A stretch of 64,000 bases of DNA, taken from Macrostomum lignano. Lineage: Eukaryota. The number at the start of each line of letters is the position of its first letter. Positions within the stretch are counted from its first letter, which is position 1. The translations under genes were made by a program, and so were the position numbers. This document shows positions 29,545 to 61,357 of the stretch, in pieces. The stretch covers positions 496,001 to 560,000 of the forward strand of contig NIVC01000158.1 in assembly GCA_002269645.1 (NCBI GenBank), given 5' to 3'. The notes under the pieces were generated by a model. The model was given only the letters and a program-made list of their open reading frames with translations. It did not search any database and was not told the DNA's origin.

Positions 29545-32500
29545 ATGTCCGGACTAGACCCCAAGGATCCGGACTTCAAGTACCTCGGCGTGGACCGGAA
29601 GGCCCTGCTGAAGGAGATCGGCAATGCCACCTTCGACTCCAAGAAGGTCTGCTGGTGCCCGGACGAGAAGGAGGGCTACGTAAAGGCGGACGTGATCTCC
29701 AGGGAGGGCGGAAAAGTCACCGTCAAGACCGAGAAGGGCGAGGCAAGCTTAACGGATATTCTTTCCTGGTGATCATTAAATTTATAACTAAAGGTAGTTT
29801 GCTTAACCTTTGAAGCGTCACCAAATTCTAGGAGAAGACCCTGAAGGAGGACGACATCCAGCAGATGAACCCGCCCAAGTTCGAGCTCTTCGAGGACATG
29901 GCCAACTTGACCTTCCTGAACGACGCTTCGGTGCTGCACAACCTTCGGCAGCGCTACTACAAACTGCTCATCTACGTGAGTTCACTAAATTTAAATTTAA
30001 AATCGAAAGCAAAATGTCAAGAAAAAAGTCAAGAAAAGAGCAGTTTTAAATGTACAAAAAAGACAAAATACAAAATTTCAATAAGACTAATAAGTGAATC
30101 CACAAAGATGCTTCAGTCTCCAGTTGACTCGCTTTGACTCAACTTTGATTGCAGACCTACTCGGGCCTGTTCTGCGTAGTGGTGAACCCCTACAAGCGCC
30201 TGCCGATCTACACCAACAGCGTGGTGATGAAGTACAAGGGCAAGCGGAAGACCGAGATGCCGCCGCACGCCTTCGCCATCTCTGACAACGCCTATTCGAA
30301 CATGTTGCAGGGTGAGATAAAACAAAATTTCCGGCTTTTACTATTTAACGAATCATTGCGGGGTTTGAATTTTAACAAAAAATATCTCTTATTCCAGAGC
30401 GCGAGAACCAGTCTGTGCTGATCACGTAAGAATTTTTTGTTTTAATTTAACTTGGACCTAATACGACAAATCTCTTTAATTTTATATTTAACAGAAATTT
30501 CAATACGTTTTTATTTGGTTTTCCGCTTGAAACTCGATAGCTATCAGATTTAATAATTAGCTTTGCTTTCGCCAAACAATGCTTATATTTACCGTGTATA
30601 CCATGAGAAGTAGTTCATTGCTACTGCAAAATTAGTAGTGCTTATTAATTGCTGTTCAGCATGGCGCATTTGTGACCTCCTTGTTAGACAAGAGAACACA
30701 TTATTTTGTGCCATCTATTTGTGACGCCAAAAAACCGCACACACTAAACCAGTGGCGAGAGCGGTGCCGGTAAAACCGAGAACACCAAGAAGGTCATCTC
30801 GTACTTTGCCCAACTGACGGCTCTCACTCAGTCCAAGGAAGCCACTGAGAAGGACGCTGACAAGAAGGTTTGAAGCAAAAACTGAGAAGACGAAAATTGT
30901 TCCTTGCCCATCGCGTTTCGAGAACCCTGATTTCCATCCCTTGTTTTCAATCTATTTGAATTGTATTGTCAAACCAGCGCATGCTAGGAACATTTACCAT
31001 ATACACTATGAAGGCTAGAGGGAGAGAGGGCACTAGAGATGGTAAGGGGACAGAGATAATGATATTTGACCGGCAATGTACACTTGGGAGGGTAGGGGAT
31101 AGAGAGAACGATCTTTGACCGGCAATGTACACTTGGGAGGGTAGGTGATAGAGAGAACGATCTTTGATCGGCAATGTACACTTGGGAGGGTAGGGGATAG
31201 AGAGAACGATCTTTGACCGGCAATGTACACTTGGGAGGGTAGGGGATAGAGAGAACGATCTTTGACCGGCAATGTACACTTGGGAGGGTAGGGGATAGAG
31301 AGAACTATCTTTGATCGGCAATGTACACTTGGGAGGGCAGAGAGAATAGATATTTAATTGAAGCTTGGGCCAACTATAGTAGAGAGCCAGATAGCTAGTG
31401 GCTATCTGAAAGGAAAAAATAAAGTAATTACATGTAGCTCGATGCTCATAGTACGAGAATTTTCGGACCATGAGACGTATTAGACCTATTTAGCACCTTT
31501 CTAAATAAGTAAATAATATTGATTGAGTAAGCAGCAGCCTTAATCATACCAAACCCTGGTTTTATCTTTATCCTTGACTATTCTGAAGCTACGTGTATTT
31601 TTTCTAAACCCTTAAATCAAACCTTGACTATACTCGTATGTACGAGCGTAACTGGTGCTGCAGGGATGTGTTTTAACTTGTCTCATACTGATTTGTGCAA
31701 CATTCCTAAAATCAGAGACCTTTCGGAACTTTTCATGACGAAATTTCGAAATGAAAATCTGACCTTTTTACTAAAGTTTTTTTTACCCGATATTTAAACC
31801 AAATTATCTGCATGCCAAATTTAACACAGTTTAATGATTAATTGACCAACCATGAGTCAGGTTTTGCATAGCTCTACCATCCTCCTCCGACGAATCTCCA
31901 GGGCAGCCTAGAGGAGCAGATTGTACAGGCCAATCCGGTGCTGGAGGCCTACGGCAATGCCAAGACGGTCAGGAACAACAACTCGTCCCGTTTCGTAAGT
32001 TGAGTTGACAACTGTTAGTCAGTTGGTTGGCTTTGCGAACTTAACTCAAGCTAATGTCCGCCATCTCTGCAGGGAAAATTTATTCGAATCCACTTCGGCC
32101 CAACCGGCAAGATCGCTGGTGCCGACATCGAATTCTGTGAGTAGCTATAAATCATAAATCAATCAGAAATCATAAATGCCACAGCGTTTCTCATATTTTT
32201 TCCCAACCGGCCAATCTCGCCATGCAGACCTGCTGGAGAAGTCGCGCGTCACCTCGCAGATGTCCGGCGAGCGCAACTACCACATCTTCTACCAGCTGCT
32301 GTCCGACTACGCCAAGCAGTGGCACGACAAGCTGCTGGTCACTTCCGACCCGGCTCTGTACTCCTTCATCAATCAGGGCGAGCTGTCCATCGACGGGGTC
32401 GATGACGCCGAGGAGATGAAGCTCACTGACGAGGCCATCAACATCCTGGGCTTCTCGAACGACGAGAAGAACGGCATGTTCAAGGCCACCTGCGCCGTCA

Positions 32501-40318: not shown

Positions 40319-42072
40319 AGTTCATTTCAATTTTGGCACCACTTATTATTTGTTCCACTTTCTTTTGCTAATTTTATTTCTGCTTTTTAGCAAATCAATT
40401 ATACAGGGGAGAGAGAGATCTGAGTTAATTCGACCAGTTTGTTATTATTAAACGAATTTTCGTTGCCAAGCAAAACGATGCAGAGTTAGCTGAATCTCTC
40501 TCTCCCCTGGACTCGCCCATCTGGAACGCTCTCTCCCCTCTGCGTGGTCAGAGACTCTGCGGAGAACCCGCAGGTGAACTTTCGCTAGCAATAAAATCTC
40601 AGTTAATCGTTTAGCAAAATATTGTAGCCCAGTCATAAATTTAGTCAAATGTCACTATTTTAACCCTTCGCTTTGATACCCCACCTCTCTAGTGAATATT
40701 AATTATTACCTAATTAACTCTTTTTCAATTGAATTTTATCGAGTTGTTTTGTTAGCAAAATACAACAGCTGCAGAAAGCGAACGGTTCAGCACGGCATAC
40801 TTTTCTGTTTTGATCTTCAATTAAAAAAATAATTCACACTTTATTAATTAGCAATATTCACGCACCGGCCTCGACTATTTAAACAATTTTTTTCTGAGAT
40901 TTTTTGTCTTTATTATTTTTGCCTTACGTTTTTACGACAGCGGCTTGTTTGCAAGTGCCTCTAAAAGTTAAGCAAAGTGGGTCGGGGTTAGTTCGCAGCT
41001 TATTGTATCAACCAGTTGGAGTCACAGTGAGCGAATGACGTAAATGCAATCAATATTTGCAGGAGGTCGTTTGGCATCACATCGGCTCACAGTTAGCGAT
41101 GACGGCAATTCTGCTGACTACTGAGCTCAAACACGAGTAGATTCGGAGTAGATTCAGAGCAGATTCGGAGTAGATTCGGAGTAGATTCGGAGCAGATTCG
41201 GAGCAGATTCGGAGTAGATTCGGAGTAGATTCGGAGTAGATTCAGAGTAGATTCAGAGTAGATTCGGAGTAGATTCGGAGTAGATTCAGAGTAGATTCGG
41301 AGTAGATTTGGAGTAGATTCGGAGTAGATTCGGAGTAGATTCGGAGTGGATTCAGAGTAGATTCAGAGTAGATTCGGAGTAGATTCGGAGTAGATTCGGA
41401 GTAGATTCGAAGTGGATTCAGAGTAGATTCAGAGTAGATTCGGAGTAGATTCAGAGTAGATTCAGAGTAGATTCAGAGTAGATTCGGAGTAGATTCAGAG
41501 TAGATTCGGAGTAGATTCCGAGTAGATTCGGAGTGGATTCAGAGTAGATTCAGAGTAGATTCAGAGTAGATTCGGAGTAGATTCAGAGTAGATTCGGAGT
41601 CGATTCGGAGTAGATTCAGAGTAGATTCAGAGTAGATTCGGAGTAGATTCGGAGTAGATTCGGAGTAGGTTCAGAGTAGATTCAGAGTAGATTCGGAGTA
41701 GATTCGGAGTAGATTCGGAGTGGATTCAGAGTAGATTCGGAGTAGATTCAGAGTAGATTCGGAGTAGATTCGGAGTAGATTCGGAGTAGATTCGGAGTAG
41801 ATTCGAAGTGGATTCAGAGTAGATTCAGAGTAGATTCGGAGTAGATTCAGAGTAGATTCAGAGTAGATTCAGAGTAGATTCGGAGTAGATTCAGAGTAGA
41901 TTCGGAGTAGATTCCGAGTAGATTCGGAGTGGATTCAGAGTAGATTCAGAGTAGATTCAGAGTAGATTCGGAGTAGATTCAGAGTAGATTCAGAGTAGAT
42001 TCGGAGTAGATTCGGAGTAGATTCAGAGTAGATCCAGAGTAGATTCGGAGTAGATTCGGAGTAGGTTCAGAG

Positions 42073-44565
42073 CACGGACTACTTAAGTAGAAGGACGCGA
42101 CACGCGCAAAACGTGCAAATTTTATTGGAGGCTGAATATTCAATTTTATGTAGCTCGACTCCAGAAACTCGCCGAAGTGTAGTTTTTTCACATGATACAA
42201 ATAATTTAGTCCTTGTTCATGTAACATATGTAATGCATGATTAAAACGATGCAGAAACCTTAGAAAGTAGTTTCAAGCGACGAAAACTAACTTTTTCTGG
42301 TGAGTTTCGAGTCTCGACGTGCGGCATTTGTAGCACAAAATATAGCTCTTCATTTTGATATAGCACTTATTTTAAACGATTCTTTTAGCTGTTCATTGTT
42401 ACTGTGAAGCGGACCTTTTTGACCTGGTCATAAGAAAACCTATCGCAAGATGTACAGACATAAAACAGATACCACTGATTCTGCACCAATCGTATCGGAT
42501 AAAGAGTCAAGACGAACTAAGACGAAAGATTTTAAGAACACGAATTTTGAGTCTTAGTAGCCATTGAATATTTTTATGCCATATTAATATTATTGGCCTT
42601 TTTAAAATGTATGCAAAAGTATATATCAAAGTGGTATAAGATAGCTAGCAGGTTTCTTGTATAAAGCAAATGCGAAAACATGCAGTTTAAACAGTATCAA
42701 CAAAAGCGTACAACGAAATATTTTACAACAAAATGATCTATTGTATAAAGATAACTTGCTATAACATTGCATCAAAAAACTAACGGTACGCAAATCTGGC
42801 AAGGCACCACTCAAAGTCGTCTTCATCATGCAAAGCCAGCCGAATGAAATGCATGTAGTCAATAAGAATAACAGATAGAAATGAGGATAAAGTGCACAAT
42901 CTTGCACCTGGACACGAGTTGGTGGTAAATGATCAGGTTTAGTAGGTAAATATAGACTAAAGTCTTGGACAAGCTATAGAGGTCCATGATCGTCTGGACA
43001 GTAGCTATACAAAAGAACTCCATGCTGCAGGAGAAGCAATACAATAGCCACCTGGCTGATGAAGTTAAAAGCTTTGCAGAAATCTATACAGACAATTGAC
43101 ACCTCCTTTTAGAGAGTCTCGCAGGTGCCATATGGACTAGCTACTTGTTGTAACAGCAGTACAGTGACAGTTGTAACAGCTCAGCCTTGGACACTTCATT
43201 GTCACAACAGTTCTGGAGCATCCTCCTTAAGATGTGTGTACACTTGTTTGTGAGGAAGCCAACCAATCGAGTATTTGTTCCATGTATACAAAATAGCAAC
43301 CTCCATGGCCTTGCCTATAGATAGAGAATTCTTTCTCCAGACCATCCAATTGAAAGTCACCTGAAAAGGATAAGGAAAATAGCTGCATAGCATGAATACT
43401 TAATGATACACAACCTAAATAAAACAAGTTAATACTTATAATATTATTCATACCTAGCATGACATTTTAACCATCTTCATTCCAGACAATTTTGAATATT
43501 TTGGCGAAACACAATACTTCCATGGGTGACCATCTAACTGCTATCCCCCCCCCTTAACCAGAGATATTGTGCCACCATTGAATTTCTATATATTAACAGA
43601 AAAACTGATTAAAACAACTTAGGCCCTATATGCCTCTGAAAGAATATAAGATGAGTACATTCTTAAAAACATAAATATCTATAAGTTCTATAGCAAAAAT
43701 ATTAATGCAGTATACATTTTTGAAGCATAGGCCTATAATTATAAATAGACTGACATCAGTCATACAAAAATATATAGGCCTACCAGTAAAATGATTAATA
43801 AGAATAGAATACTTAAAGTTAAATACTTATATTAATAGGCCTATATTTTATATATTATCTTAGTCTAAGCCTAGCTAGCTATACCCTAAAGTATAGCCTT
43901 ATTAAAGTCTTATTAAATCTTATTAAAGTATAGATTAGATAATCCAAATTATTTAAAATTTCTAAAAAATTTTTTAACTCTAAACAATCAAATACTATTT
44001 ATAGATACTCAATAATAGATAGAAGAGATAGCTTATAGGTTTACCAAGAATACCAACTAATGCCAATGGTAATGATATAAAATTGTTAGCTAGGCCCTAT
44101 ACCTAGTCACCTAGATAATGTAGGTATATGCCTACTAATTTAATAATGAAATACTGCAGGCCCCTATGCTGTAATAACAAATAGCTACATTATATTTTAT
44201 CATCGCCAGGGTAGTAGCAGTGGGCCCTGACTAGGCCTAGCAAATGTTGATAAATTTCCAAAGAGTTTACTTGCATAGATGGCCTATGGTCTACATACAA
44301 ATTCTAATTTAAATTAGGTTAGGCTAGCTATGTATAAACGATACATTTCTAAACAGTACTAAGCTAGACGGAAATTATGTATTGATAAAAAATGGGACAA
44401 AAACAATAAACACTCTAAAAAAGATCTGCATTCTATGATAAGAACATTTCAATGCCTTGCTAAAACTAAAGCTATAGTATACGCTAAGGGAACTTCAGCC
44501 TCCAAAAAAAATTACACGAATCGTGCGTGTTGCGTCCTATATAAACGACAATTAAGTAGTCCGTG
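42073..44565 (-). mobile_element. P-element-superfamily-like non-autonomous DNA transposon, copy 1 (2493 bp)
   Basis: Perfect 14-bp TIR CACGGACTACTTAA (42073-42086 / 44552-44565). 8-bp TSD GTTCAGAG (42065-42072 / 44566-44573). 12-bp subterminal inverted repeat TTGGAGGCTGAA (42125-42136 / 44494-44505). Minus-strand remnant GDFQLDGLEKEFSIYRQGHGGCYFVYMEQIL (~43270-43365) resembles the P/THAP9 transposase catalytic-Glu motif. Confidence 0.8.
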
Positions 44566-44958
44566 GTTCAGAGTAGATTCAGAGTAGATTCGGAGTAGAT
44601 TCGGAGTGGATTCAGAGTAGATTCGGAGTAGATTCAGAGTAGATTCGGAGTAGATTCGGAGTAGATTCGGAGTAGATTCGGAGTAGATTCGGAGTAGATT
44701 CGAAGTGGATTCAGAGTAGATTCAGAGTAGATTCGGAGTAGATTCAGAGTAGATTCAGAGTAGATTCAGAGTAGATTCGGAGTAGATTCAGAGTAGATTC
44801 GGAGTAGATTTGGAGTGGATTCAGAGTAGATTCAGAGTAGATTCAGAGTAGATTCGGAGTAGATTCAGAGTAGATTCAGAGTAGATTCGGAGTAGATTCG
44901 GAGTAGATTCAGAGTAGATCCAGAGTAGATTCGGAGTAGATTCGGAGTAGGTTCAGAG

Positions 44959-47450
44959 CACGGACTACTTAAGTAGAAGGACGCGACACGCGCAAAACGT
45001 GCAAATTTTATTGGAGGCTGAATATTCAATTTTATGTAGCTCGACTCCAGAAACTCGCCGAAGTGTAGTTTTTTCACATGATACAAATAATTTAGTCCTT
45101 GTTCATGTAACATATGTAATGCATGATTAAAACGATGCAGAAACCTTAGAAAGTAGTTTCAAGCGACGAAAACTAACTTTTTCTGGTGAGTTTCGAGTCT
45201 CGACGTGCGGCATTTGTAGCACAAAATATAGCTCTTCATTTTGATATAGCACTTATTTTAAACGATTCTTTTAGCTGTTCATTGTTACTGTGAAGCGGAC
45301 CTTTTTGACCTGGTCATAAGAAAACCTATCGCAAGATGTACAGACATAAAACAGATACCACTGATTCTGCACCAATCGTATCGGATAAAGAGTCAAGACG
45401 AACTAAGACGAAAGATTTTAAGAACACGAATTTTGAGTCTTAGTAGCCATTGAATATTTTTATGCCATATTAATATTATTGGCCTTTTTAAAATGTATGC
45501 AAAAGTATATATCAAAGTGGTATAAGATAGCTAGCAGGTTTCTTGTATAAAGCAAATGCGAAAACATGCAGTTTAAACAGTATCAACAAAAGCGTACAAC
45601 GAAATATTTTACAACAAAATGATCTATTGTATAAAGATAACTTGCTATAACATTGCATCAAAAAACTAATGGTACGCAAATCTGGCAAGGCACCACTCAA
45701 AGTCGTCTTCATCATGCAAAGCCAGCCGAATGAAATGCATGTAGTCAATAAGAATAACAGATAGAAATGAGGATAAAGTGCACAATCTTGCACCTGGACA
45801 CGAGTTGGTGGTAAATGATCAGGTTTAGTAGGTAAATATAGACTAAAGTCTTGGACAAGCTATAGAGGTCCATGATCGTCTGGACAGTAGCTATACAAAA
45901 GAACTCCATGCTGCAGGAGAAGCAATACAATAGCCACCTGGCTGATGAAGTTAAAAGCTTTGCAGAAATCTATACAGACAATTGACACCTCCTTTTAGAG
46001 AGTCTCGCAGGTGCCATATGGACTAGCTACTTGTTGTAACAGCAGTACAGTGACAGTTGTAACAGCTCAGCCTTGGACACTTCATTGTCACAACAGTTCT
46101 GGAGCATCCTCCTTAAGATGTGTGTACACTTGTTTGTGAGGAAGCCAACCAATCGAGTATTTGTTCCATGTATACAAAATAGCAACCTCCATGGCCTTGC
46201 CTATAGATAGAGAATTCTTTCTCCAGACCATCCAATTGAAAGTCACCTGAAAAGGATAAGGAAAATAGCTGCATAGCATGAATACTTAATGATACACAAC
46301 CTAAATAAAACAAGTTAATACTTATAATATTATTCATACCTAGCATGACATTTTAACCATCTTCATTCCAGACAATTTTGAATATTTTGGCGAAACACAA
46401 TACTTCCATGGGTGACCATCTAACTGCTATCCCCCCCCTTAACCAGAGATATTGTGCCACCATTGAATTTCTATATATTAACAGAAAAACTGATTAAAAC
46501 AACTTAGGCCCTATATGCCTCTGAAAGAATATAAGATGAGTACATTCTTAAAAACATAAATATCTATAAGTTCTATAGCAAAAATATTAATGCAGTATAC
46601 ATTTTTGAAGCATAGGCCTATAATTATAAATAGACTGACATCAGTCATACAAAAATATATAGGCCTACCAGTAAAATGATTAATAAGAATAGAATACTTA
46701 AAGTTAAATACTTATATTAATAGGCCTATATTTTATATATTATCTTAGTCTAAGCCTAGCTAGCTATACCCTAAAGTATAGCCTTATTAAAGTCTTATTA
46801 AATCTTATTAAAGTATAGATTAGATAATCCAAATTATTTAAAATTTCTAAAAAATTTTTTAACTCTAAACAATCAAATACTATTTATAGATACTCAATAA
46901 TAGATAGAAGAGATAGCTTATAGGTTTACCAAGAATACCAACTAATGCCAATGGTAATGATATAAAATTGTTAGCTAGGCCCTATACCTAGTCACCTAGA
47001 TAATGTAGGTATATGCCTACTAATTTAATAATGAAATACTGCAGGCCCCTATGCTGTAATAACAAATAGCTACATTATATTTTATCATCGCCAGGGTAGT
47101 AGCAGTGGGCCCTGACTAGGCCTAGCAAATGTTGATAAATTTCCAAAGAGTTTACTTGCATAGATGGCCTATGGTCTACATACAAATTCTAATTTAAATT
47201 AGGTTAGGCTAGCTATGTATAAACGATACATTTCTAAACAGTACTAAGCTAGACGGAAATTATGTATTGATAAAAAATGGGACAAAAACAATAAACACTC
47301 TAAAAAAGATCTGCATTCTATGATAAGAACATTTCAATGCCTTGCTAAAACTAAAGCTATAGTATACGCTAAGGGAACTTCAGCCTCCAAAAAAAATTAC
47401 ACGAATCGTGCGTGTTGCGTCCTATATAAACGACAATTAAGTAGTCCGTG
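44959..47450 (-). mobile_element. P-element-superfamily-like non-autonomous DNA transposon, copy 2 (2492 bp)
   Basis: Near-identical to copy 1 (offset 2886), with the same TIRs and TSD GTTCAGAG at 44951-44958 / 47451-47458. Differences seen: C42784 vs T45670, and a 9-C vs 8-C run. Confidence 0.8.
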
Positions 47451-47834
47451 GTTCAGAGTAGATTCAGAGTAGATTCGGAGTAGATTCGGAGTAGATTCAG
47501 AGTAGATTCGGAGTAGATTCGGAGTGGATTCAGAGTAGATTAAGGGTAGATCTGAGATAGATTAAAGGGTAGATTCAGAGTAGATTAAGGGGTGAATTCC
47601 AAGTGGATTGCAAGTAGATTCAGAGTACATTCAGGCATATTTGGCTGCATTTGCAGTAGGCTCATACAGTCGCAGATTTGATTAAATTTTGTTTAAAACT
47701 AAACAAGCAGTAAGCATTGACACCAATTGATTCCAAAAGCAGATCAACTTTGGCGTATTAATCAGAGGACAAACTCGCATAATCTTTTTAATGTCATCAT
47801 TTTTTGCAGAATCTGCTTCCACGGCGGTGACAAG

Positions 47835-50520: not shown

Positions 50521-51111
50521 AACATCAGTTAACCAGACAATGTGACACACAGATCATATTTATTTCAACTGTTATTAGCTCCGTAATGCTGATGGATTGA
50601 CATGCACTCAGAACACTTCAATTTTGCTACTTGTATTGAAATATAACGTAAGTATAAATGTATATCAGGTTATCTACATGTAGTTCAGTACGTAATCATT
50701 AAATGCGTGTACTTTTACATTTTGTTGGTTTATATTAACTAAGCCTAATTAATTTCATAGCAAAAAAGCAATGAAGATACAAAACAATTTCAAATTTTTA
50801 CAACCCAAGAGAAAGCTTGTTGAAATCTTTTTTTGTAATTTAGATTTTTAAACTTTTGTGCACTGTCTAACCGTCTACTTTGATAATAAAATAATGCAAG
50901 CATACAGTACGCGTGTTCCATGGTGACTTTTAGTATTGATGTACTTTTATTTGAAGTTTAATAGTACATATAGAGACTGATTCTGTACAGGTGATATAGC
51001 TATTAGTTCACTGATGACATTTAGGTGATTAATAATTTATTATTAATGACTTTTCAATAGGAATAATTAGCAAATATTCAAATAAAACCGAGATCAAACT
51101 GATTCCTTGCT

Positions 51112-51200
51112 TTATAATCTGGCAACCTGCATATTGCCAAGCACGATATTGTCATCCAGCTCTGTGTCCGCCTCCCTGACTGCCAAGCCGGGCGGACCGT
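51112..51200 (-). CDS. Putative alternative terminal coding exon of the Crumbs-like gene (…DGPPGLAVREADTELDDNIVLGNMQVARL*)
   Basis: GC-rich island between AT-rich DNA and an array. Pyrimidine-rich acceptor TTATTGCAG| at 51201, then 29 open codons to TAA (51114-51112). Phase 1, compatible with an internal donor G|GTAATA at 54132/54131 in the last Crumbs exon. Minus-strand AATAAA at ~51041-51036. Confidence 0.5.
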
Positions 51201-51251
51201 CTGCAATAACAGCATAGCGGAGACAGGAAAGATCACTGGGCTGTTGTGCGG

Positions 51252-51792
51252 TGGGTAGATTGGGTGGATTTGTGTGGGTAGACTGTGGATTGGGTAGATT
51301 TGAGTGGATAGATTACGAATTGGGTAGATTTGAGTGGATAGACTGTGGATTGGGTAGATTTGAGTGGGTAGACTGTGGATTGGGTAGATTTGAGTGGATA
51401 GACTGTGGATTGGGTAGATTTGAGTGGGTAGACTGTGGATTGGGTAGATTTCAGTGGATAGATTGTGGATTGGGCAGATTTCAGTGGGTAGACTGTGGAT
51501 TGGGTAGATTTCAGTGGGTAGGCTGTGGATTGGGTAGATTTCAGTGGGTAGACTGTGGATTGGGTAGATTTCAGTGGGTAGACTGTGGATTGGGTAGATT
51601 CCAGTGGGTAGACTGTGGATTGGGTAGATTCCAGTGGGTAGACTGTGGATTGGGTAAATTTGAGTGGGTAGACTGTGGATTGGGTAGATTTCAGTAGGTA
51701 GACTGTGGATTGGGTAGATTTGAGTGGGTAGACTGTGGACTAGGTAGATTTGAGTGGGTAGACTGTGGATTGGGTAGATTTCAGTGGGTAGA
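51252..51792. repeat. 30-bp minisatellite (GTAGATTTGAGTGGGTAGACTGTGGATTGG)
   Basis: Direct reading. Confidence 0.93.
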
Positions 51793-52497
51793 TTAATTTA
51801 GTTTAGTTTAGAGAGTGGATAAATTTGAGACGCTAAATAACACTTGAACAAATATTAGAATACATAAAATGTAACGCAAATAAAATAACAAAATTCGAAG
51901 TCCTCTAATTAGAATTTTGTTCAGAGTTTAAAGACGTTTTAAAGGATGCAGTTCCTGTACAAGCCGGCTTGACTTTAAACTGCTGCTACTACTCACAGCC
52001 TACGCATGCGAGTAGTATATGCAAATCTACACCAGTTTTAGGTTTAATTTAATACTTCGCATCAATAAAAACTCAATTCGACTCGCTCGCAAACATATCA
52101 GGCAAGTAAAAAAGTACATTTAATAAAAACCAACACTCAAAGGAAAGAATATTTTTAGTCTTGGCGCCACACAAAAATAAACTGATAAACGTCCGTTTCT
52201 ACTCAATCATGCTAGAAAAAGTAGTATGGCGATGAGAAAAACACCTGTAAATATGGAATGATAAATAGGTCAAATTAATACGAAAAAGTAAGCGGTTAAA
52301 CACGAGATTAGGTGAGAAGATCCGGTGTCCCAGAAGCGTTTCAGAAAAAATAGACATTAACAGAGAGGTTCACTAGAAAGTACAGAATTTCACTGCATTC
52401 TGTGGAGACTCGAGCATTTAGCAGCTGATAAACCTCTACATGTATATAAAAGAAATATGCCCCATTAGAACTGCTCTATCTACGAATACCTATGTGT

Positions 52498-53480
52498 AGC
52501 AGGTGACATTCCCTATCTAACAGGTGAAATTCCCCTGTCTAACAGGTGACACCAATGTCTAACAGGTGACACCAATGTCTAACAGGTGACATTCCCTGTC
52601 TAACATGTGACATTCCCTGTCCAACAGGTGACATTCCCTGTCTAACAGGTGACACCAATGTCTAACAGGTGACATTCCCCTGTCTAACAGGTGACATTCC
52701 CCTGTCTAACAGGTGACACCAATGTCTAACATGTGACATTCCCTGTCCAACAGGTGACATTCCCTGTCTAACAGGTGACACCAATGTCTAACATGTGACA
52801 TTCCCTGTCCAACAGGTGACATTCCCTGTCTAACAGGTGACATTCCCCTGTCTAACAGGTGACACCCATGTCTAACATGTGACATTCCCTGTCCAACATG
52901 TGACATTCCCTGTCTAACAGGTGACATTCCCCTGTCTAACAGGTGACACCAATGTCTAACATGTGACATTCCCTGTCTAACAGGTGACACCCATGTCTAA
53001 CATGTGACATTCCCCTGTCTAACAGGTGACACCCATGTCTAACAGGTGACATTCCCCTGTCTAACAGGTGACACCCATGTCTAACATGTGACATTCCCTG
53101 TCCAACAGGTGACATTCCCTGTCCAACAGGTGACACCCATGTCTAACAGGTGACACCCATGTCTAACATGTGACATTCCCTGTCCAACAGGTGACATTCC
53201 CTGTCCAACAGGTGACACCCATGTCTAACAGGTGATATTCCCCTGTCTAACAGGTGACACCAATGTCTAACATGTGACATTCCCTGTCTAACATGTGACA
53301 TTCCCCTGTCTAACAGGTCACACCCATGTCTAACATGTGACATTCCCTTGTCCAACAGGTGACACCCATGTCTAACAGGTGACATTCCCCTGTCTAACAG
53401 GTGACACCAATGTCTAACATGGGACATTCCCTGTCCAACAGGTGACACCCATGTCTAACAGGTGACACCCATGCCTCACA
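52498..53480. repeat. 21-22-bp minisatellite (CTAACAGGTGACATTCCCTGT variants)
   Basis: Direct reading. Confidence 0.93.
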
Positions 53481-54072
53481 GTTGACATTTCCTATCTAAC
53501 AGCAGATGACAACAGGTAACACCATGTCTAACAGATGACACCTTAAAACGTGACATCTCCCTGTCTAGCAGGTGACATCGCAGTACATCATTGTGAACTT
53601 CAGAAATAAGAGCTACATTAAATCACTTCAACGAGCCCAAACCAATTATTAAAAATGTAAAAAAGTGCAAAAATGCAAAACTTCCAACACAGCCATATGC
53701 GCAATGTACAAAGACATGCACTATTAATAACAGTACATCAGGTCAATGTAATACATAAAGTGCCAATGTTCTACATCTGGTTAGCTATTAAATAATGATA
53801 ACAATTCAGCTAAACAATTATTGAATGGAAAAATAAATATCAATCGCCCATTAGTAATAGAAAAAATTAACAAAATGCAAATTATACATCGCGTTATACA
53901 ACTACTACTGTTGAAAGTAGACAGACTTTAACAAACACTTGCGATCAACTTCCCGATAGGTTACTTAGTCATGCAAATCCGATAAAATGCGTTTAAATAT
54001 GAAATATCCGATCCCACAGCCCTGTGGACTAAACTAAAACAAAAATTATAACGAAACAAAATTGGCGCCAAT

Positions 54073-57000
54073 TCAAATGAGGCGCTCCTCAGTGGGCGGC
54101 CTGAGCCCTGACAGGGTAGCAGTTTTATTACCGTGATTGGTCTCCTCCTTGGATGGCCGGTATTGTCCGGTCTCGGAGCGCCGGTTGCGTGCGAGTTTGA
54201 TCAGCACAACAGCAACTAGAATTGCGGCGGTGGTTCGGTTAAACAAAAAATAATTAGTGGCTAAATGTTTCATATTTATATGTAAAACAACAGCAACTAA
54301 TTAACCAAATTTATTCTAAACCAAAAAGTAAAACAGCAATAAGCATGCAATACAAATAAGCTTAACTGGTGCCTTCTTAACAGGTATCTGTCTCATGTCT
54401 AACAGATATCTGTCTCGTGTCTAACAGGTATCTGTCTCATGTCTAACAAATATCTGTCTCATGTCTAACAAATATCTGTCTCATGTCTAACAGGTATCTG
54501 TCTCATGTCTAACAGGTATCTGTCTCATGTCTAACAGGTATCTGTCTCACGTCTAACAGGTATCTGTCGCATGTCTAACAGATACCTGTCTCATGTCTAA
54601 CAGGTATCTGTCTCATGTCTAACAGGTACCGTCTTAACAATAGACATATCTGCCTCTTCGCGATACCTCTTACTTTCTACTGCTATGAGTAGACACTGGC
54701 AAACATGCTAATAAAAAAGAAAACGGGAATCACATCTACTAGGCCATAAACCAGCCAGCTACTCACTAATGACAACAACAAGCAGCAGCGCCAGGACGCT
54801 CAGCGCCACCACCACCGGGGTGGAGACGCCGGCCACAGCCGGGGCGCAGGGCACGACGCTGCAGTCGGCGCTGCCGCAGGCGGCACCAGAGAAGCCGGGC
54901 CGGCAGACGCACTCTCGATAGTTCCACAGATCCACGCAGCGGCCGGAGTTTAAACAGGCTGGCAGTGGCTTGAGTTCACACACTGGGTCGCCATGGCAAC
55001 CAATCAGGGGTGGCTGAGGCGCGCTCCCATTGGCTGGCCAATCAACGTAGCGGACGAAGCCGGGCTCTCCGGCTGGCTGCGACCAATCAGAGAGCGGCAG
55101 CAGCCGGCCGTTCAGTCTGACTTCGTCTAGGCAGCCCTTGAATCCGTCACCAACTGTTGCTATGGCAACGGAATCAAGCGTCAGACTGGCATTTGGCAAA
55201 CTCTCCGAGCTTTCCGCCAGCCACAACTTTGAGTCATTGCTCAGGCTGGTCACCTGCAGCTCTAGCGGGTTGTTCGGTTCGGTGGTTACGTTAAATCGAT
55301 AAAATTCTCCGGTTGCTAAGGACGCCACAGTTGTAGCCGTTCGGTTGTCAAGGCTGGCCGCCAGCTGGCCGGTCGGCGTCAGGGCGATGCTCAGCAGGCG
55401 GTCGGCCCGCCTGATGGACAGGAGAGTCGGGGCCCGGCCGCTGCCATCGCTGCTGCTATTTGACGCAGAACTCAACGCCTGTCGAGTGCGCACCAAGCCG
55501 ACAATGGCTGTCAGCGGCTCGTCGAGGCTGTCAGAGGGCGACAGGCGCCACGCGGAAGACGAAGGCGAGGGCGAGGCTTGGCTGTAGCTGAAAGTGGCGG
55601 CAGCGCGACCTGCGAATGATGGAATTGATAGCGAGAGAGAATAGAGAGAACAGTACGAGACTAGAGGTGTTTCTATATTTAGCTCAGGGCTAAGACCACG
55701 CTGTGTATCATGTAACTGACTTCAGAGAAATCTCCACAAACAGCTGCGTACTAACCGCCGCCAACTATGCTTAACTTTTGTAGATGCCAACGGCCTCCCT
55801 CGAGGCTACGATGCAAAAGTTGTATCGTAATAAATAATACCAATTGATTACCCCTGCTCTAATGGGCAGATGTGCAACCGACAGCTCAGCCGCAGCTATA
55901 GCGCGGCGCATCTGAAGGCTGCGTACAATTAGCCCAGCTAATGCTGGCACCCATTTCACAGCTGGGTGAACCGAAGTGTCTTGCTCAAGGACACAAATTG
56001 TTCCGAGGGGGGGCCGAGAATCGAACCCCTGACCTTTCAGTCGTGAGTCCGACGTTCTAAGCACCAGGCTACAACCCCTATTGTGGCCTTTTGTATCTTA
56101 AGTAAAAACACTTGCAGTAGCAGATAGAATGTATGTTTTCGTTATTTTTTCTTAAGGTATTTTTCCCCTGTATTGCTACTATAAGTAAAGCAGTTAATGA
56201 AGTTTATTATAGTTAGCTCGTAATTTCAAACGTTCAATATTCTATTATTTCTACTGTAAGTAAAGTATTACCGAAAATGCGATAATACTGGTCAAATTCG
56301 CTAGCATTTCTGCTCAACACAGTCTCCAGATGCAAGCTTATCATATTTAATTCAAACAGCGACCACAGGCTCCAGGTACAGGACAGCAGAGCCCTACTAA
56401 TCAATTAGTCATGAATAGCCGAGCTTTGAGAGAGGAAATTACTGAGCACTTCCCCGTTTCTCCAGTCTTTTGTCTCCCTAACCTATTCTTAGAAACGCTT
56501 CTCTTCAATCAATCAAAAAGGGGAATTTAATCCCTCCACTTCCTAATCCGTTTTGTTGGGTTGGCAACTCTTCGTGACAGTGCGTGAATAATGAGGTTTC
56601 TTGACACTTGGGCCTGCACTTTTTAATATCCGTCAACAAACTCCCTGCCACTAACATTTCCCAAGCCTGAACTACTATTAGTAGGGTAAAAGCATATCTA
56701 CTTAGCTGTCTGCCCGATTACAGAAGCTTCAAATAATCGCAACAGATTTGATAGGAAAGTTAACCATGAGTGAAAAAATTTTTTCGAATTATCGTACGAA
56801 CATATTGTACTAGTAACCTAAAGTGCACTTTAGAATCCTACAGACTAGTACATATCCTCTTTAATATCGTCGTAAAGATTAATCAGACAGGTAGCCATGC
56901 AGCTCGGACACTCTCGCTAGGTTTCCAGTTAGAACCGAAACGACAATAAAGTACAAGCTGCACTTACACTCGAACGTGCGCGGCGTCAGATTGACGCAGG

Positions 57001-60000
57001 CGCTGCCGTTGGGACACGAGCGCCTGGCGCAGAAGTCGATGGCGCTGCAGTTGGCGCCTATCCAGCCGGAGGCGCAGCTGCAGCTAAAAAAATGCGCAAA
57101 AAATTCATGTTAAAAATCATTTTTAGTTCTAAACCCCCCAAAATCCAAACCCCCCAAATCCGAAACCCCCAAATCCAAAATCCCCACAAATCCGAAACCC
57201 CCACAAATCCAAACCCCCCAAATCCGAAACCCCCACAAATCCGAAACCCCCAAATCCAAAACCCCCACAAATCCGAAACCCCCACAAATCCAAACCCCCC
57301 AAATCCAAAACCCCCACAAATCCGAAACCCCCACAAATCCGAAACCCCACAAATCCGAAACCCCCAAATCCAAAACCCCCACAAATCCGAAACCCCCAAA
57401 TCCAAAACCCCCACAAATCCGAAACCCCCAATCCAAAACCCCCACAAATCCGAAACCCCCCAAATCCAAAACCCGAAATCCAAACCCCCCAAATCCAAAA
57501 CCCCCACAAATCCAAAACCCCCACAAATCCGAAACCCCCACAAATCCAAAACCCCCACAAATCCAAAACCCCCACAAATCCAAAACCCCCCAAATCCAAA
57601 ACCCCCACAAATCCGAAACCCCCCAAATCCAAAACCCCTAAAATTCCAAAACCCCAAATCCAAAACCCCAACTTCAACTTGGGGTTACAAAGCCCCAACT
57701 CTAAACTTTCAACTAATCTGAACACCGACTACGTTCCAAAACTCCAAGTAGCCGAAGAAGGCAACTCACGTGGAGTTGCCATCCACGCATCTGTCCCGCA
57801 CCGAGCACACGCTGGAGTTGCAGTCGTCAATGTCCACGCTGCAGTTGCGGCCCTCCCAGCCCTGGTAGCAGGAGCAGCTGTAGTTGTTCAGCAAGTCCCG
57901 GCAGATCCCGTTCACACAGGGCTTCGACGAGCATTCGTTGATGTCTTTGTCGCATCGAACGCCTGCAGCATGTTTTGTAGTGACATTGTAAAATATGAGT
58001 AGTGACGTTCCGGATACAGCTTTGGGATCCCATCTAACAGACACTCAAGATCCCATATAACAGACACCCAAGATCCCATCTAACAGACACTCAAGATCCC
58101 ATCTAACAGACACTCAAGATCCCATCTAACAGACACCCAAGATCCCATCTAACAGACACCCAAGATCCCATCTAACAGACACCCAAGATCCCATCTAACA
58201 GACACCCAAGATCCCATCTAACAGACACCCAAGATCACATCCAACAGATTCAACATCCCAGCTAACAGACTTAAGATCTAATCTAACAGACCCAAGATCT
58301 AATCTAACAGACCCAATATCCCATCTAATAGACCCAAGATCCTATCTAACAGACACTCAAGACCCAACGGACTACCAGAAGCAGAAAATACTTGACTGGT
58401 TGATTGACGCTTTTTCCAACACTGCTGTGCAGCGTGGTTCCTAGTGGCTTAAAAAAGCAGATCAATAGACTCAAGTGTATGCCAGCATTGCCAGGCTACT
58501 CACACGACAGCCGCATACACAATGCTTTCTCAACTGAGCCCACAATGCGTTACTTTGTTTCCCAGGCTTTAAGCCGGAAGTGTAGCGTAAACGGCCGGAG
58601 TAAATATATCACTAACAACGCCTCGTCACCTTGTTAGCAATTGCCCGCGCCGACTAGCGATCTCAAAGCCTCTACAAAGCAGCTCAAAATCACGGCAGCA
58701 GACCTTCGTTATTGCACGCGACGCCGCCCTAAAGCACTTGTCAGAAAATGTTTTAGTATGCTAGAAAACTACTTGAAACTAACAATTCTACTCGTATTTT
58801 ATTGACACGCTTTGCTCCGCTTCCAGCTGTTGTTGGAATGAAAACTTATAGTTAGCTAAATTTGTTATTTTTTAACAAGCCCGCCACATGGGCGAGGCTG
58901 CGCAAAAAGCTACACGCACTCGTGCCATGGCATAAATGGCATAGCAACAATGCCCCAGCATCGTATGAAAGATTCTTTTGATTGCAAGCTGAATTACTCT
59001 TAAGATCCATTAACTCTTAAGTCTTACTCTTAACTCCTAAGACTCGACTCAAGATCTCACCTAACAGACAATCAAGATCCCATCTAACAGACTGAATATC
59101 CCATCTAACAGACTCAAGATCCCATTTAACAGACTCAAGATCCCATCTAACAGACTCAAGATCCCATTTAACAGACTCAAGATCCCATCTAACAGACTCA
59201 AGATCCCATCTAACAGACTCAAGATCCCATCTAACAGACTGAATATCCCATCTAACAGACTCAAGATCCCATTTAACAGACTCAAGATCCCATCTAACAG
59301 ACTCAAGATCCCATCTAACAGACTCAAGATCCCATTTAACAGACTCAAGATCCCATCTAACAGACTCAAGATCCCATTTAACAGACTCAAGATCCCATTT
59401 AACAGACTCAAGATCCCATTTAACAGACTCAAGATCCCATCTAACAGATTGAATATCCCATCTAACAGACTCAAGATCCCATCTAACAGACTCAAGATCC
59501 CATTTAACAGACACAAGATCCCATCTAACAGACTCAAGATCCCATCTAACAGACTCAAGATCCCATCTAACAGACTCAAGATCCCATCTAACAGACTCAA
59601 GATCCCATCTAACAGACTCAAGATCCCATCTAACAGATTCAAGATGCCATCTCCATCAACCGAACTGACCCTCAAACCCGGGCGAGCAGCTGCAGTTGAA
59701 GTAAGGCGGCTCAAGGGACACCCCCAGACAGGTGCCGTTGATGCACACAGGCAGGCTGGTGATGTTGAGGTCCGGCTGCAGCTGGCTGCAGTAGTTTGAC
59801 GCGGTGGAACAGTAGGGCGGGATGTAGGGCAGCGGGCAGATGCACGGCGGCGAGGCCGTGATATTGTTGCAGATGCCGCCGTTTTTGCAGTCGGTCGGGG
59901 TGCATGTGGTTGCGCGCCTGGCGCGGGAAAGGGCGCCGAGTTGTTGCGAGTCTGCTGTGGCGCGATTAGGGAGACGACTGTACTGTAATACTGTCTCACA

Positions 60001-61357
60001 GGATCTTCATTGCAACTCCCTGCCTTCTGTAATCTCCTCCCATTTCCTCTCAAATCTAATCTCTGCCTGTCTAATCTAACCTCCCTCCATTCTCTCAAAT
60101 CTAATCTCTTCCTGTCAAATCCAATCTCCATTCTCTCAAATCTAATCTGTCCCTGTCTAATCTAATCTCCATCCTCTCAAATCTAATCTCTCTCTGTCTA
60201 ATCTCCATCCTCTCAAATCTAACCCCTCTCTGTCTAATCTAATCTCCATCCTCTCAAACCTAATCTCTCTCTGTCTAATCTAATCTCCATCCTCTCAAAT
60301 CTAATCTCTCTCTGTCTAATCTAATCTCCATTCTCTCAGATCTAATCCCTCCCTGTCTAATCTAACCTCCCTCTATTCTCTCAAATCTAATCTCTTCCTG
60401 TCAAATCTAATTCCCTTCCATCCTCTCAAATCTAATCTCTCCCTGTCTAATCTAACCTCCCTTCATCCTCTCAAATCTAATCTCTTCCTATCAAATCCAA
60501 TCTCCATTCTCTCAAATCTAATCTGTCCCTGTCTAATCTAATCTCTTTTCATCTTCTCAAATCTAATCTCACCCTGGCTACTTTTATCTCCCTCAATCCT
60601 TTTGATTCGACTGTCTCCTATTTTATCAAATATAATCTATCATCTATATAATCTGCTCTCATAGTACTCCTTTTCTCTATTCTTCCTTCACTCATTCCCC
60701 TCTGCATTCTCGTCTCACCCTCCGCACAGTCTCCTACGCCTCTGATCTCCCCTCTCATTTATTCTCACATCCCGCGCAGCCGCTGGCCGACCAGTTGTTG
60801 AAGCAGTGCCGGCCTCCGCCCGCCTCGTCCCGGACGCAGCCATCAAAGGCGGACACAGCCAGGAGGTGCGCCGAACCGTCCGCCAAGCCGTCACTGTCAG
60901 CGCCGGGGCTGGTCTCGAACCGGCAAACACCTGCTCCCAGACTAGCATTGGCAGCGCGCGACACTTCAACTTTAATGAGAATATTATCACCGCGACCGGA
61001 CACCAAAGTGGACAGCTGAAGGTCGCCCACCGGATTCGAAGCCCTCCCAGCAGTGCGCAGGTCGCAGGCCTGCACCCGGCCGAGCTGGGGCTGGCTGAAC
61101 AGCACCGTGTGACCATCGCCATCCGCAGTAGACACCGGTTGCCAGGCAACAGAAAAAGCCGCCCGGCCAAGAGTTGGAGCTGTTAGGAGAGCTAGCCCAA
61201 GTCCTCGATTCCTGCTGCTCTGACAGGCTGTGAATTTGAGGCTGGTGTCGTTGTCCATGGCAACCATGATGGCGTCCTTGTCGTGCAGAGCTGCCGAAGC
61301 CGCTGCCGTCGCCGTGGACGCCGTCAGGGCGGTAAAAATTAGCAACCAGACAAGCAT
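54073..61357 (-). CDS. crb: Compact Crumbs-family type I membrane protein: signal peptide, degenerate LamG-like N-domain, ~5 EGF, LamG, EGF, TM, FERM-binding motif and PDZ ligand ERLI; 6 exons, ~721 aa
   Basis: Exons 61357-60769, 59951(or 59954, NAGNAG)-59670, 57962-57770, 57083-56968, 55609-54767, 54215-54073; GT-AG with consistent phases. Signal peptide MLVWLLIFTALTASTATA; cbEGF DINECSSKPCVNGICRDLLNNYSCSC; post-LamG EGF CLNSGRCVDLWNYRECVCRPGFSG; cytoplasmic tail RRSETGQYRPSKEE...PPTEERLI*, the Crumbs signature. Confidence 0.9.
54378..54630. repeat. 22-bp minisatellite (CTAACAGGTATCTGTCTCATGT), Crumbs intron 5
   Basis: Direct reading. Confidence 0.92.
55828..56078 (-). mobile_element. tRNA-derived SINE (~250 bp) in Crumbs intron 4
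   Basis: Minus strand: tRNA-like head GGGGTTGTAGCCTGGTGCTTAGAACGTCGGACTCACGACTGAAAGGTCAGGGGTTCGATTCTCGGCCCCC with Pol III A and B boxes, then the SINE-typical body TGTGTCCTTGAGCAAGACACTT...CACCCAGCTGTGAAATGGGT, then an AT-rich tail TATTATTTATTA. Confidence 0.8.
57133..57670. repeat. ~16-17-bp C/A-rich minisatellite (CCCCACAAATCCGAAAC variants), Crumbs intron 3
   Basis: Direct reading. Confidence 0.9.
58025..58365. repeat. 23-bp minisatellite (GATCCCATCTAACAGACACCCAA), Crumbs intron 2
   Basis: Direct reading. Confidence 0.9.
59060..59645. repeat. 21-bp minisatellite (GATCCCATCTAACAGACTCAA), Crumbs intron 2
   Basis: Direct reading; 7-aa period. Confidence 0.93.
60035..60570. repeat. ~40-bp pyrimidine-rich minisatellite (TCTAATCTCTC...TCTCAAA), Crumbs intron 1
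   Basis: Direct reading; variable unit length. Confidence 0.85.

What the first reader, a model, noticed from the sequence alone, without database searches (positions are those of the whole stretch)
51112..54132. Alternative Crumbs tail: ERLI PDZ ligand swapped for VARL via a distal exon
An internal donor CAC G|GTAATA (54132/54131) lies after the FERM-binding motif (GQYRPSKEE) but before PPTEERLI. It joins in phase to an orphan GC-rich exon at 51200-51112, giving ...GQYRPSKEETNH-DGPPGLAVREADTELDDNIVLGNMQVARL*. The 2.9-kb intron would contain two minisatellites, like the other long introns here, and AATAAA follows the exon. ERLI binds Stardust/PALS1 and Par6 (established), and mammalian CRB3 has an ERLI/CLPI splice switch (established). 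An independently evolved FERM-retaining, PDZ-switching isoform in an invertebrate Crumbs would be new to my knowledge. Splicing from the exon-5 donor (54767/54766, also phase 1) is a second possible route.
Basis: inference. Interest (0 to 1): 0.72.

Follow-up and report, generated by a model that had tools for sequence, protein, structure and literature searches.

The report
Alternative Crumbs tail in a flatworm
The flatworm Macrostomum lignano can splice its Crumbs polarity gene from a weak site inside the last coding exon to a small exon 2.9 kb downstream, which replaces the conserved ERLI docking tail with an unrelated tail ending VARL; a public transcript-based gene model of a near-identical gene copy already has exactly this form, but nobody has described it.

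Summary
The window is Macrostomum lignano assembly Mlig_3_7, contig NIVC01000158.1 (0 mismatches over 19,928 bases). It carries a short Crumbs gene on the minus strand. GenBank annotates this copy with the ERLI tail (PAA89249.1, identical to my exon model). Seven exons reproduce that protein exactly, and the last intron is ACG|GTAATA...TTGCAG|ACG at the homologous positions. The M. lignano annotation was built only from RNA data, so this is indirect transcript evidence. The internal donor is weak (3.0 bits; 15 of 16 curated donors score higher). The distal acceptor is strong (9.4 bits, top 0.4% of AGs). The claimed frame has the best codon score of six. AATAAA follows the exon. The closest known case is mammalian CRB3-ERLI/CLPI. 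Not shown: read counts, use of the junction by this particular copy, conservation outside the species, and any binding role for VARL. The sequence is already public but undescribed.

The parts
60769..61357 (-). Crumbs coding exon 1 (start codon, signal-peptide-like N-terminus)
   Evidence: Exon model translates exactly to PAA89249.1/P0147
59670..59951 (-). Crumbs coding exon 2 (EGF-like); NAGNAG acceptor CAGCAG at 59954/59951
57770..57962 (-). Crumbs coding exon 3 (EGF-like)
56968..57083 (-). Crumbs coding exon 4 (EGF-like)
54767..55609 (-). Crumbs coding exon 5 (weak Laminin-G match, EGF, first part of the transmembrane helix); strong donor TTA|GTGAGT at 54766
54132..54215 (-). Common part of the composite last exon: rest of the transmembrane helix plus the juxtamembrane FERM-binding region ...RNRRSETGQYRPSKEETNH
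   Evidence: 100% identical in all three gene copies
54073..54131 (-). ERLI-specific read-through segment (GNKTATLSGLRPPTEERLI and stop). It begins with the weak internal donor GTAATA (54131-54126), which scores 3.0 bits
   Evidence: tail profile 12.1 bits; PDB Crumbs tail 4wsi/4yl8, E=0.029
51201..54131 (-). Alternative intron of 2,931 nt (3,554 and 2,686 nt in the other two copies)
52488..53489 (-). Minisatellite (21/42-nt unit) with the CTGTTAGAC core shared with minisatellites of other Crumbs introns
51258..51792 (-). Minisatellite with a 30-nt unit, 17.8 copies
51201..51222 (-). Distal acceptor CCGCTATGCTGTTATTGCAG, 9.4 bits, top 0.43% of AGs in the window
51112..51200 (-). Alternative terminal coding exon: (D)GPPGLAVREADTELDDNIVLGNMQVARL plus TAA
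   Evidence: Identical peptide at the end of PAA59849.1. 89/89 identical in copy g7 and 88/89 (one synonymous change) in copy g5. Best codon score of six frames
50946..51041 (-). Candidate poly(A) signals of the distal exon: AATAAA at 51041-51036 and 50951-50946, ATTAAA at 50962
   Evidence: conserved in copy g5

Best explanation
The last coding exon of this Macrostomum lignano Crumbs gene is a composite terminal exon. If the exon is read through, the mRNA encodes the canonical 38-residue tail with the FERM-binding motif and C-terminal ERLI. If the weak internal donor at 54131 (CACG|GTAATA, just after ...GQYRPSKEETNH) is used, 2.9 kb is removed, including the ERLI codons and two minisatellites. 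Splicing then joins to a strong acceptor at 51200. The product keeps the ectodomain, transmembrane helix and FERM-binding motif, and ends in 29 unrelated, acidic residues (…NMQVARL) followed by its own AATAAA signals. Shown: the sites, the frame, and a transcript-derived public protein with exactly this junction in a 98%-identical gene copy. Inferred: that this copy also uses the junction; that the choice depends on competition between a weak donor and 3'-end formation or read-through; and that the isoform cannot dock Stardust/PALS1 or Par6 through ERLI while still engaging FERM proteins.
For: P0121 = PAA59849.1 ends in the predicted tail. Seven exons in locus L001 reproduce it exactly, with last intron ACG|GTAATA...TTGCAG|ACG. 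The window is 100% identical to the locus of PAA89249.1, the ERLI form. The last exon is 143/143 identical in all three copies, so the same donor and the same ERLI read-through exist in each. The M. lignano annotation is built from RNA-seq and de novo transcripts, with TACO run at isoform-frac 0.75. Acceptor 9.4 bits (top 0.43%) and donor 3.0 bits, against a median near 7.8 bits for 16 curated donors, all with G at +5. Codon score is best in the claimed frame and exceeds about 98% of stop-free non-coding windows. AATAAA lies 71 and 161 nt downstream and is conserved in the other copy. Alt-exon divergence between copies is 1/89, and that change is synonymous; coding exons differ by about 1% and flanks by 2-6%. 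An older, independent UniProt model also leaves the gene right after EETNH.
Against: I could not see any read or junction count, so the evidence is a gene model. Only one of three near-identical copies is annotated this way, and reads cannot easily be assigned among the copies, which differ at one site in the alt exon. The donor lacks the +5 G found in all 16 curated donors. No relative outside M. lignano was found, so there is no evidence of conservation. The low divergence of the exon is not statistically distinguishable from its flanks. The alternative tail has no recognisable motif and no similarity to Crumbs tails. No AATAAA or ATTAAA lies between the ERLI stop and 52124, so the proximal 3' end assumed by the competition model has not been located.
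Confidence: 0.8

Rival explanations
1. The junction is real but is splicing noise or a by-product without function. A strong orphan acceptor downstream occasionally captures a weak cryptic donor. The VARL protein is then rare or irrelevant, and the assembler assigned it to one gene copy by accident of multi-mapping.
For: The donor is weak. No conservation beyond the species was found. The tail has no recognisable motif. Only one of three copies carries the model.
Against: TACO kept only isoforms at 75% or more of the major isoform at a locus, so at that locus this was not a trace form. The codon score is coding-like in exactly this frame. The only difference between copies within the exon is synonymous.
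Confidence: 0.13
2. The distal exon mainly belongs to another transcript: a 3'-UTR exon of the ERLI mRNA reached from a donor downstream of the stop codon, or a separate downstream RNA. In that case the coding junction in PAA59849.1 would be a merge made by the assembly pipeline.
For: The pipeline merges ORF-containing transcripts with downstream poly(A)-bearing fragments across repetitive gaps of up to 10 kb. A 9.6-bit donor-like site at 51996 and an 8.4-bit acceptor-like site at 52392 lie inside the intron. No proximal AATAAA was found.
Against: A merge would not change the ORF. The deposited CDS needs a precise in-frame GT-AG junction at the internal donor, and I reproduced it exactly. TBONE cuts units at spliced-leader sites, yet this exon remained inside the gene.
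Confidence: 0.05
3. It is a chance open frame next to chance splice-like sites, and is never transcribed.
For: All three frames of the segment are open, and 14% of GTs match the donor score.
Against: A deposited transcript-derived protein carries the identical 29 residues after the identical junction.
Confidence: 0.02

Closest known systems
Mammalian CRB3 isoforms CRB3-ERLI (a) and CRB3-CLPI (b)
   Same: Both arise by alternative splicing within the last coding exon. Both keep an identical ectodomain, transmembrane helix and 4.1/FERM-binding region, and replace ERLI with a short unrelated C-terminus (23 aa there, 29 aa here) (PMC2064851).
   Different: Here the new tail comes from a separate exon 2.9 kb downstream with its own poly(A) signals. 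The protein is a 721-731-aa Crumbs with EGF repeats and a weak LamG match, not the tiny CRB3. The tail ends VARL, not CLPI. Fan et al. found CRB3-CLPI in mammals but apparently not in Drosophila or zebrafish, so this would be an independent origin. Nothing is known here about importin-beta binding or ciliary location.
Drosophila Crumbs
   Same: Type I membrane protein with EGF and LamG repeats and a tail of about 37 aa carrying a FERM-binding motif and ERLI. The tail aligns with PDB 4wsi/4yl8.
   Different: All predicted Drosophila isoforms share the same 37-aa tail (PMC3977972). The flatworm gene has a second tail.
C. elegans CRB-3 (tail ends EGLI)
   Same: An invertebrate Crumbs-family member whose last four residues depart from ERLI (PMC4359734).
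   Different: That is a fixed sequence difference in a separate gene, not an alternative splice form of an ERLI-bearing gene.
Composite terminal exons such as the immunoglobulin mu secreted/membrane switch (from general knowledge, not tested here)
   Same: A weak 5' splice site inside a terminal exon competes with use of that exon's own end. Splicing to downstream terminal exon(s) changes the C-terminus and the poly(A) site.
   Different: The proximal poly(A) site has not been located here, and no regulation has been shown.

Membership tests
Crumbs family | Short cytoplasmic tail with a juxtamembrane FERM-binding motif (G-T/x-Y-x-P-S) and C-terminal ERLI | tested here: met
   RNRRSETGQYRPSKEETNHGNKTATLSGLRPPTEERLI. 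It scores 12.1 bits against a profile of 28 Crumbs tails and matches PDB Crumbs tail 4wsi/4yl8 at E=0.029.
Crumbs family | Type I membrane protein with EGF-like repeats in the ectodomain | tested here: met
   Pfam EGF, hEGF and EGF_2 score above their cut-offs. The N-terminal hydrophobic leader and a single hydrophobic span before the tail are read from the sequence.
Crumbs family | Laminin-G domain(s) between the EGF repeats | tested here: inconclusive
   Laminin_G_2 matches at residues 466-562 with E=0.025-0.045, 14.7-15.5 bits, below the 22.9-bit cut-off.
Crumbs family | Closest relatives are Crumbs proteins | tested here: inconclusive
   28 of the 150 best representatives end in a Crumbs tail with ERLI. 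However, the hits are driven by EGF repeats, and Jagged/Delta proteins also score.
Crumbs family | ERLI binds the Stardust/PALS1 and Par6 PDZ domains | not testable with these tools
   Needs binding assays.
ERLI-less alternative-tail Crumbs isoform (CRB3-CLPI type) | Produced by alternative splicing downstream of the FERM-binding region, within the last coding exon | tested here: met
   Donor lies after ...EETNH. PAA59849.1 is reproduced exactly with this junction.
ERLI-less alternative-tail Crumbs isoform (CRB3-CLPI type) | Transcript evidence for the junction | tested here: inconclusive
   Indirect only: a transcript-derived public model of a 98%-identical copy. No reads were seen. This window's own copy is annotated as ERLI.
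ERLI-less alternative-tail Crumbs isoform (CRB3-CLPI type) | New tail confers a distinct partner or location (importin-beta, cilia for CRB3-CLPI) | not testable with these tools
   No recognisable motif. The tail does not resemble Crumbs distal tails: 21% of shuffles score as high.
Composite terminal exon with splice versus poly(A) competition | Sub-optimal internal 5' splice site | tested here: met
   3.0 bits. 15 of 16 curated donors score higher, and it lacks the +5 G that all 16 have.
Composite terminal exon with splice versus poly(A) competition | Proximal poly(A) site between the internal donor and the distal exon | tested here: inconclusive
   No AATAAA or ATTAAA until ATTAAA at 52124, 52053 and 52048, about 2 kb past the ERLI stop.
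Composite terminal exon with splice versus poly(A) competition | Distal terminal exon with its own poly(A) signal | tested here: met
   AATAAA at 51041 and 50951, conserved in copy g5. This is sequence-level evidence only.

The most novel reading that the evidence does not exclude
The VARL form is a regulated, functional isoform that uncouples Crumbs from the Stardust/PALS1-Par6 module while keeping FERM (Moesin/Yurt/Expanded-type) coupling. That would make it a convergent counterpart of mammalian CRB3-CLPI in a flatworm. After the recent genome duplication of M. lignano, the copies may have begun to divide the two tails between them: one copy is annotated ERLI and one VARL, and the g5 acceptor tract differs at two bases.
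Probability: 0.2. Interest if true: 0.7.

Novelty: new member of a known kind. Interest (0 to 1): 0.45.

Why it matters
ERLI is the most conserved feature of Crumbs proteins and their link to the Stardust/PALS1-PATJ and Par6-aPKC polarity modules. The papers I read describe only one natural ERLI-less splice form that keeps the FERM motif: mammalian CRB3-CLPI, which its discoverers reported as apparently absent from Drosophila and zebrafish (PMC2064851). All predicted fly Crumbs isoforms share one tail (PMC3977972). A second, independently evolved case in a flatworm would suggest a recurring need for a PDZ-independent, FERM-competent Crumbs. M. lignano has transgenesis (PMC5730564), and by general knowledge RNAi and a multiciliated epidermis, so isoform-specific tests are practical there. 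The finding also shows that an unnamed 'hypothetical protein' in GenBank is a Crumbs isoform.

Tried and rejected
1. A 73-aa query spanning the transmembrane helix, FERM motif and alternative tail found nothing in the 5.8-billion-protein index. This was a false negative of the word prefilter, because the full-length query later found the exact sequence.

2. Is the distal exon a diverged duplicate of the ancestral distal Crumbs tail (ELDDNIVL resembles VE[LM]DNVLK)? I built a profile from 28 Crumbs tails. The alternative peptide scores -0.7 bits, and 1,044 of 5,000 shuffles do as well, whereas the ERLI read-through scores 12.1 bits. Rejected.

3. Conservation outside the species. The exhaustive representative search returned only EGF-rich proteins and no closer Macrostomum relative. 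The word-index search returned only the M. lignano cluster. No conclusion is possible.

4. Selection on the exon judged from the three gene copies. There is 1 synonymous change in 89 nt, against about 2-6% divergence in the flanks. The sample is too small to be significant.

5. Rfam found nothing in the window. The fibronectin and monobody hits to the tail in the PDB search are spurious.

6. Gene identifiers Mlig002106 and Mlig011649 appear in no searchable paper and in none of the supplements I could read. No paper combines Macrostomum or flatworm Crumbs with isoforms.

7. I did not scan the metagenome, viral or prokaryote DNA collections, because they are not expected to hold flatworm sequence.
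Full report
**Where the window comes from.**
The window carries three genes.
- An AMP-binding, DIP2-like gene on the plus strand.
- A muscle-type myosin heavy chain on the plus strand, whose motor domain is 82% identical to that of a monogenean flatworm.
- After 14 kb of repeat-rich spacer, a Crumbs-like gene on the minus strand.

A full-length exon model of the Crumbs gene hit Macrostomum lignano proteins at 98-100% identity. The locus of one of them, PAA89249.1 on NIVC01000158.1 of assembly GCA_002269645.1, is identical to the window over 19,928 overlapping bases. The window is therefore M. lignano Mlig_3_7.

**Checking the observation.**
- Exon-5 donor ATTA|GTGAGT at 54767/54766.
- ERLI tail ending at 54073.
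- GT at CACG|GTAATA, 54132/54131.
- Acceptor ttattgcag|ACGG at 51201/51200.
- TAA at 51114-51112.
- Two minisatellites inside the 2,931-nt interval.
- AATAAA 71 and 161 nt after the stop.

Joining 54132 to 51200 gives ...GQYRPSKEETNH-DGPPGLAVREADTELDDNIVLGNMQVARL*. Joining from the exon-5 donor is also in frame. The last coding exon starts at 54215.

**How much of this could be chance.**
The 'in phase' argument is weak, because all three frames of the distal segment are open for 16-46 codons (read). I curated 16 introns from the myosin and Crumbs genes and built small weight matrices from them.
- The internal donor scores 3.0 bits. That is below 15 of the 16 real donors in leave-one-out scoring. 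It lacks the +5 G that all 16 have, and 14% of all GTs in the window score as well.
- The acceptor scores 9.4 bits. That is near the top of the real acceptors and in the top 0.43% of 8,594 AGs.
- Codon usage favours the claimed frame over the other five. Only 1.6-2.3% of stop-free 29-codon windows from non-coding sequence score as high, and the score lies in the lower part of the range of real Crumbs coding windows.

From sequence alone the case is suggestive, not decisive.

**The decisive result.**
The 90%-identity cluster holds four M. lignano entries.
- PAA89249.1 (721 aa) equals my ERLI model of the window exactly.

From its locus (L001) seven exons reproduce that protein residue for residue. 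The last intron is ACG|GTAATA ... TTGCAG|ACG, 3,554 nt long, at the positions homologous to 54131 and 51200.

The paper that produced this annotation states that it was generated from RNA-seq mapped with STAR. The reads were assembled with StringTie and merged with a de novo transcriptome by TACO (isoform-frac 0.75). Units were then cut by experimental trans-splicing and poly(A) data (TBONE), and ORFs were called by TransDecoder (PMC5730564). The model is therefore indirect transcript evidence for the junction.

An older UniProt model from another assembly (A0A1I8HDW2) is a chimera of the upstream PDE6D gene, Crumbs and antisense myosin. It too leaves Crumbs right after EETNH. That is weak support for the donor.

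**Comparison of the three gene copies.**
- The composite last exon is 143/143 identical in all three, so each copy has both the ERLI read-through and the internal donor.
- The distal exon is 89/89 identical in copy g7 and 88/89 in copy g5. The one change is synonymous (AGA to AGG).
- Coding exons differ by about 0-2.9% and unique non-coding flanks by about 0.2-6%. The low divergence of the distal exon fits a coding exon but is not significant by itself.
- The g5 acceptor tract differs from the window at two bases.
- Because the copies are so alike, I cannot tell which copies actually produce the VARL form.

**Is the gene a Crumbs gene?**
- The tail matches a profile of 28 Crumbs tails (12.1 bits) and the Drosophila Crumbs tail in PDB entries 4wsi/4yl8 (E=0.029).
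- EGF repeats are clear.
- A Laminin-G match is present but below threshold.
- Of the best 150 representatives, 28 end in a Crumbs tail with ERLI.

I file it as a short Crumbs-family member.

**Mechanism.**
The last coding exon is a composite terminal exon. Read-through gives ERLI. Use of the weak internal donor removes the ERLI codons and joins a strong distal acceptor. The result is a protein with the same ectodomain, transmembrane helix and FERM-binding motif, but with a 29-residue acidic tail and its own poly(A) signals.

The junction and its coding consequence are shown. The regulation is inferred: competition between a weak donor and read-through or 3'-end formation. I found no AATAAA or ATTAAA between the ERLI stop and 52124, so the proximal 3' end is not located. 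Loss of ERLI predicts loss of docking to the Stardust/PALS1 and Par6 PDZ domains; this rests on established knowledge of the motif and was not tested here. Whether VARL binds any PDZ domain is unknown. The tail shows no similarity to conserved Crumbs distal tails.

**Comparison with what is known.**
The closest case is mammalian CRB3-CLPI. It is made by alternative splicing within the fourth exon. It shares the ectodomain, transmembrane helix and 4.1-binding domain with CRB3-ERLI, and carries 23 divergent C-terminal residues. It was reported in mammals but apparently not in Drosophila or zebrafish (PMC2064851). All predicted Drosophila Crumbs isoforms share one tail. C. elegans CRB-3 ends in EGLI, but as a fixed sequence. 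I found no paper on flatworm Crumbs isoforms and none naming these gene identifiers.

**Verdict.**
It is real at the level of a gene model. It is a new, apparently independent example of a known kind of Crumbs isoform. It is undescribed in the literature I could search, but its sequence is not new to the databases. Its abundance, copy of origin, conservation and function remain open. Interest is moderate.

Noticed in passing
window 52515-53534, 54397-54625, 58032-58352, 59082-59636 (minus strand): Four different minisatellites (units of 21-42 nt) in Crumbs introns, including the alternative intron, share the core CTGTTAGAY in the sense orientation. 65 of the 66 matches in the window lie there, against 1.3 expected. 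None occurs in the minisatellites of the myosin or DIP2-like genes.
   Followed up: partly
window 51996 and 52392 (minus strand), segment 52392-51997: Inside the alternative intron, a 9.6-bit donor-like site (GCT|GTGAGTA) and an 8.4-bit acceptor-like site bracket a 396-nt unique AT-rich segment. The segment is 97.7-99.1% conserved between the gene copies and holds the only ATTAAA hexamers after the ERLI stop. It may be the proximal 3' end of the ERLI mRNA or an extra exon.
   Followed up: partly
window about 63307-63101 (minus strand); P0148: The upstream neighbour on the same strand is a PDE6D / GMP_PDE_delta gene. UniProt A0A1I8HDW2 (2,206 aa, 'Delta-like protein') is a chimeric prediction that fuses PDE6D, Crumbs and an antisense translation of the myosin gene.
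   Followed up: partly
window 59954/59951 (minus strand): Tandem NAGNAG acceptor CAGCAG at the start of Crumbs exon 2. The deposited models use 59951 (…GCAGYSQQ…); using 59954 would add one residue.
   Followed up: no
window 29742/29743 (plus strand): The first coding exon of the myosin heavy chain seems to end at a GC donor (GAG|GCAAGC). Two adjacent exons (30158-30391 and 30730-30870) match overlapping parts of homologues, which might indicate alternative exons.
   Followed up: no
window 41135-47634: A large tandem duplication with a period of about 2,886 bp, carrying 11-nt microsatellites. It lies in the spacer between the convergent myosin and Crumbs genes.
   Followed up: no
L003 13385-14226 (copy g7, NIVC01003638.1): The third gene copy has a one-base gap in exon 5. 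Its deposited protein (PAA50433.1, 629 aa) therefore ends in a frameshifted ...VAGVSTRWWWR. This is either an assembly error or a decaying copy.
   Followed up: no
window 51123-51115 (last three codons of the distal exon): The new C-terminus -ARL fits the peroxisomal PTS1 pattern [SAC][KRH][LM]. For a type I membrane protein this is presumably a coincidence.
   Followed up: no
The word-indexed protein search missed an exact 73-residue match that is present in the database. A negative result from that tool with a short query is not evidence of absence.
   Followed up: yes
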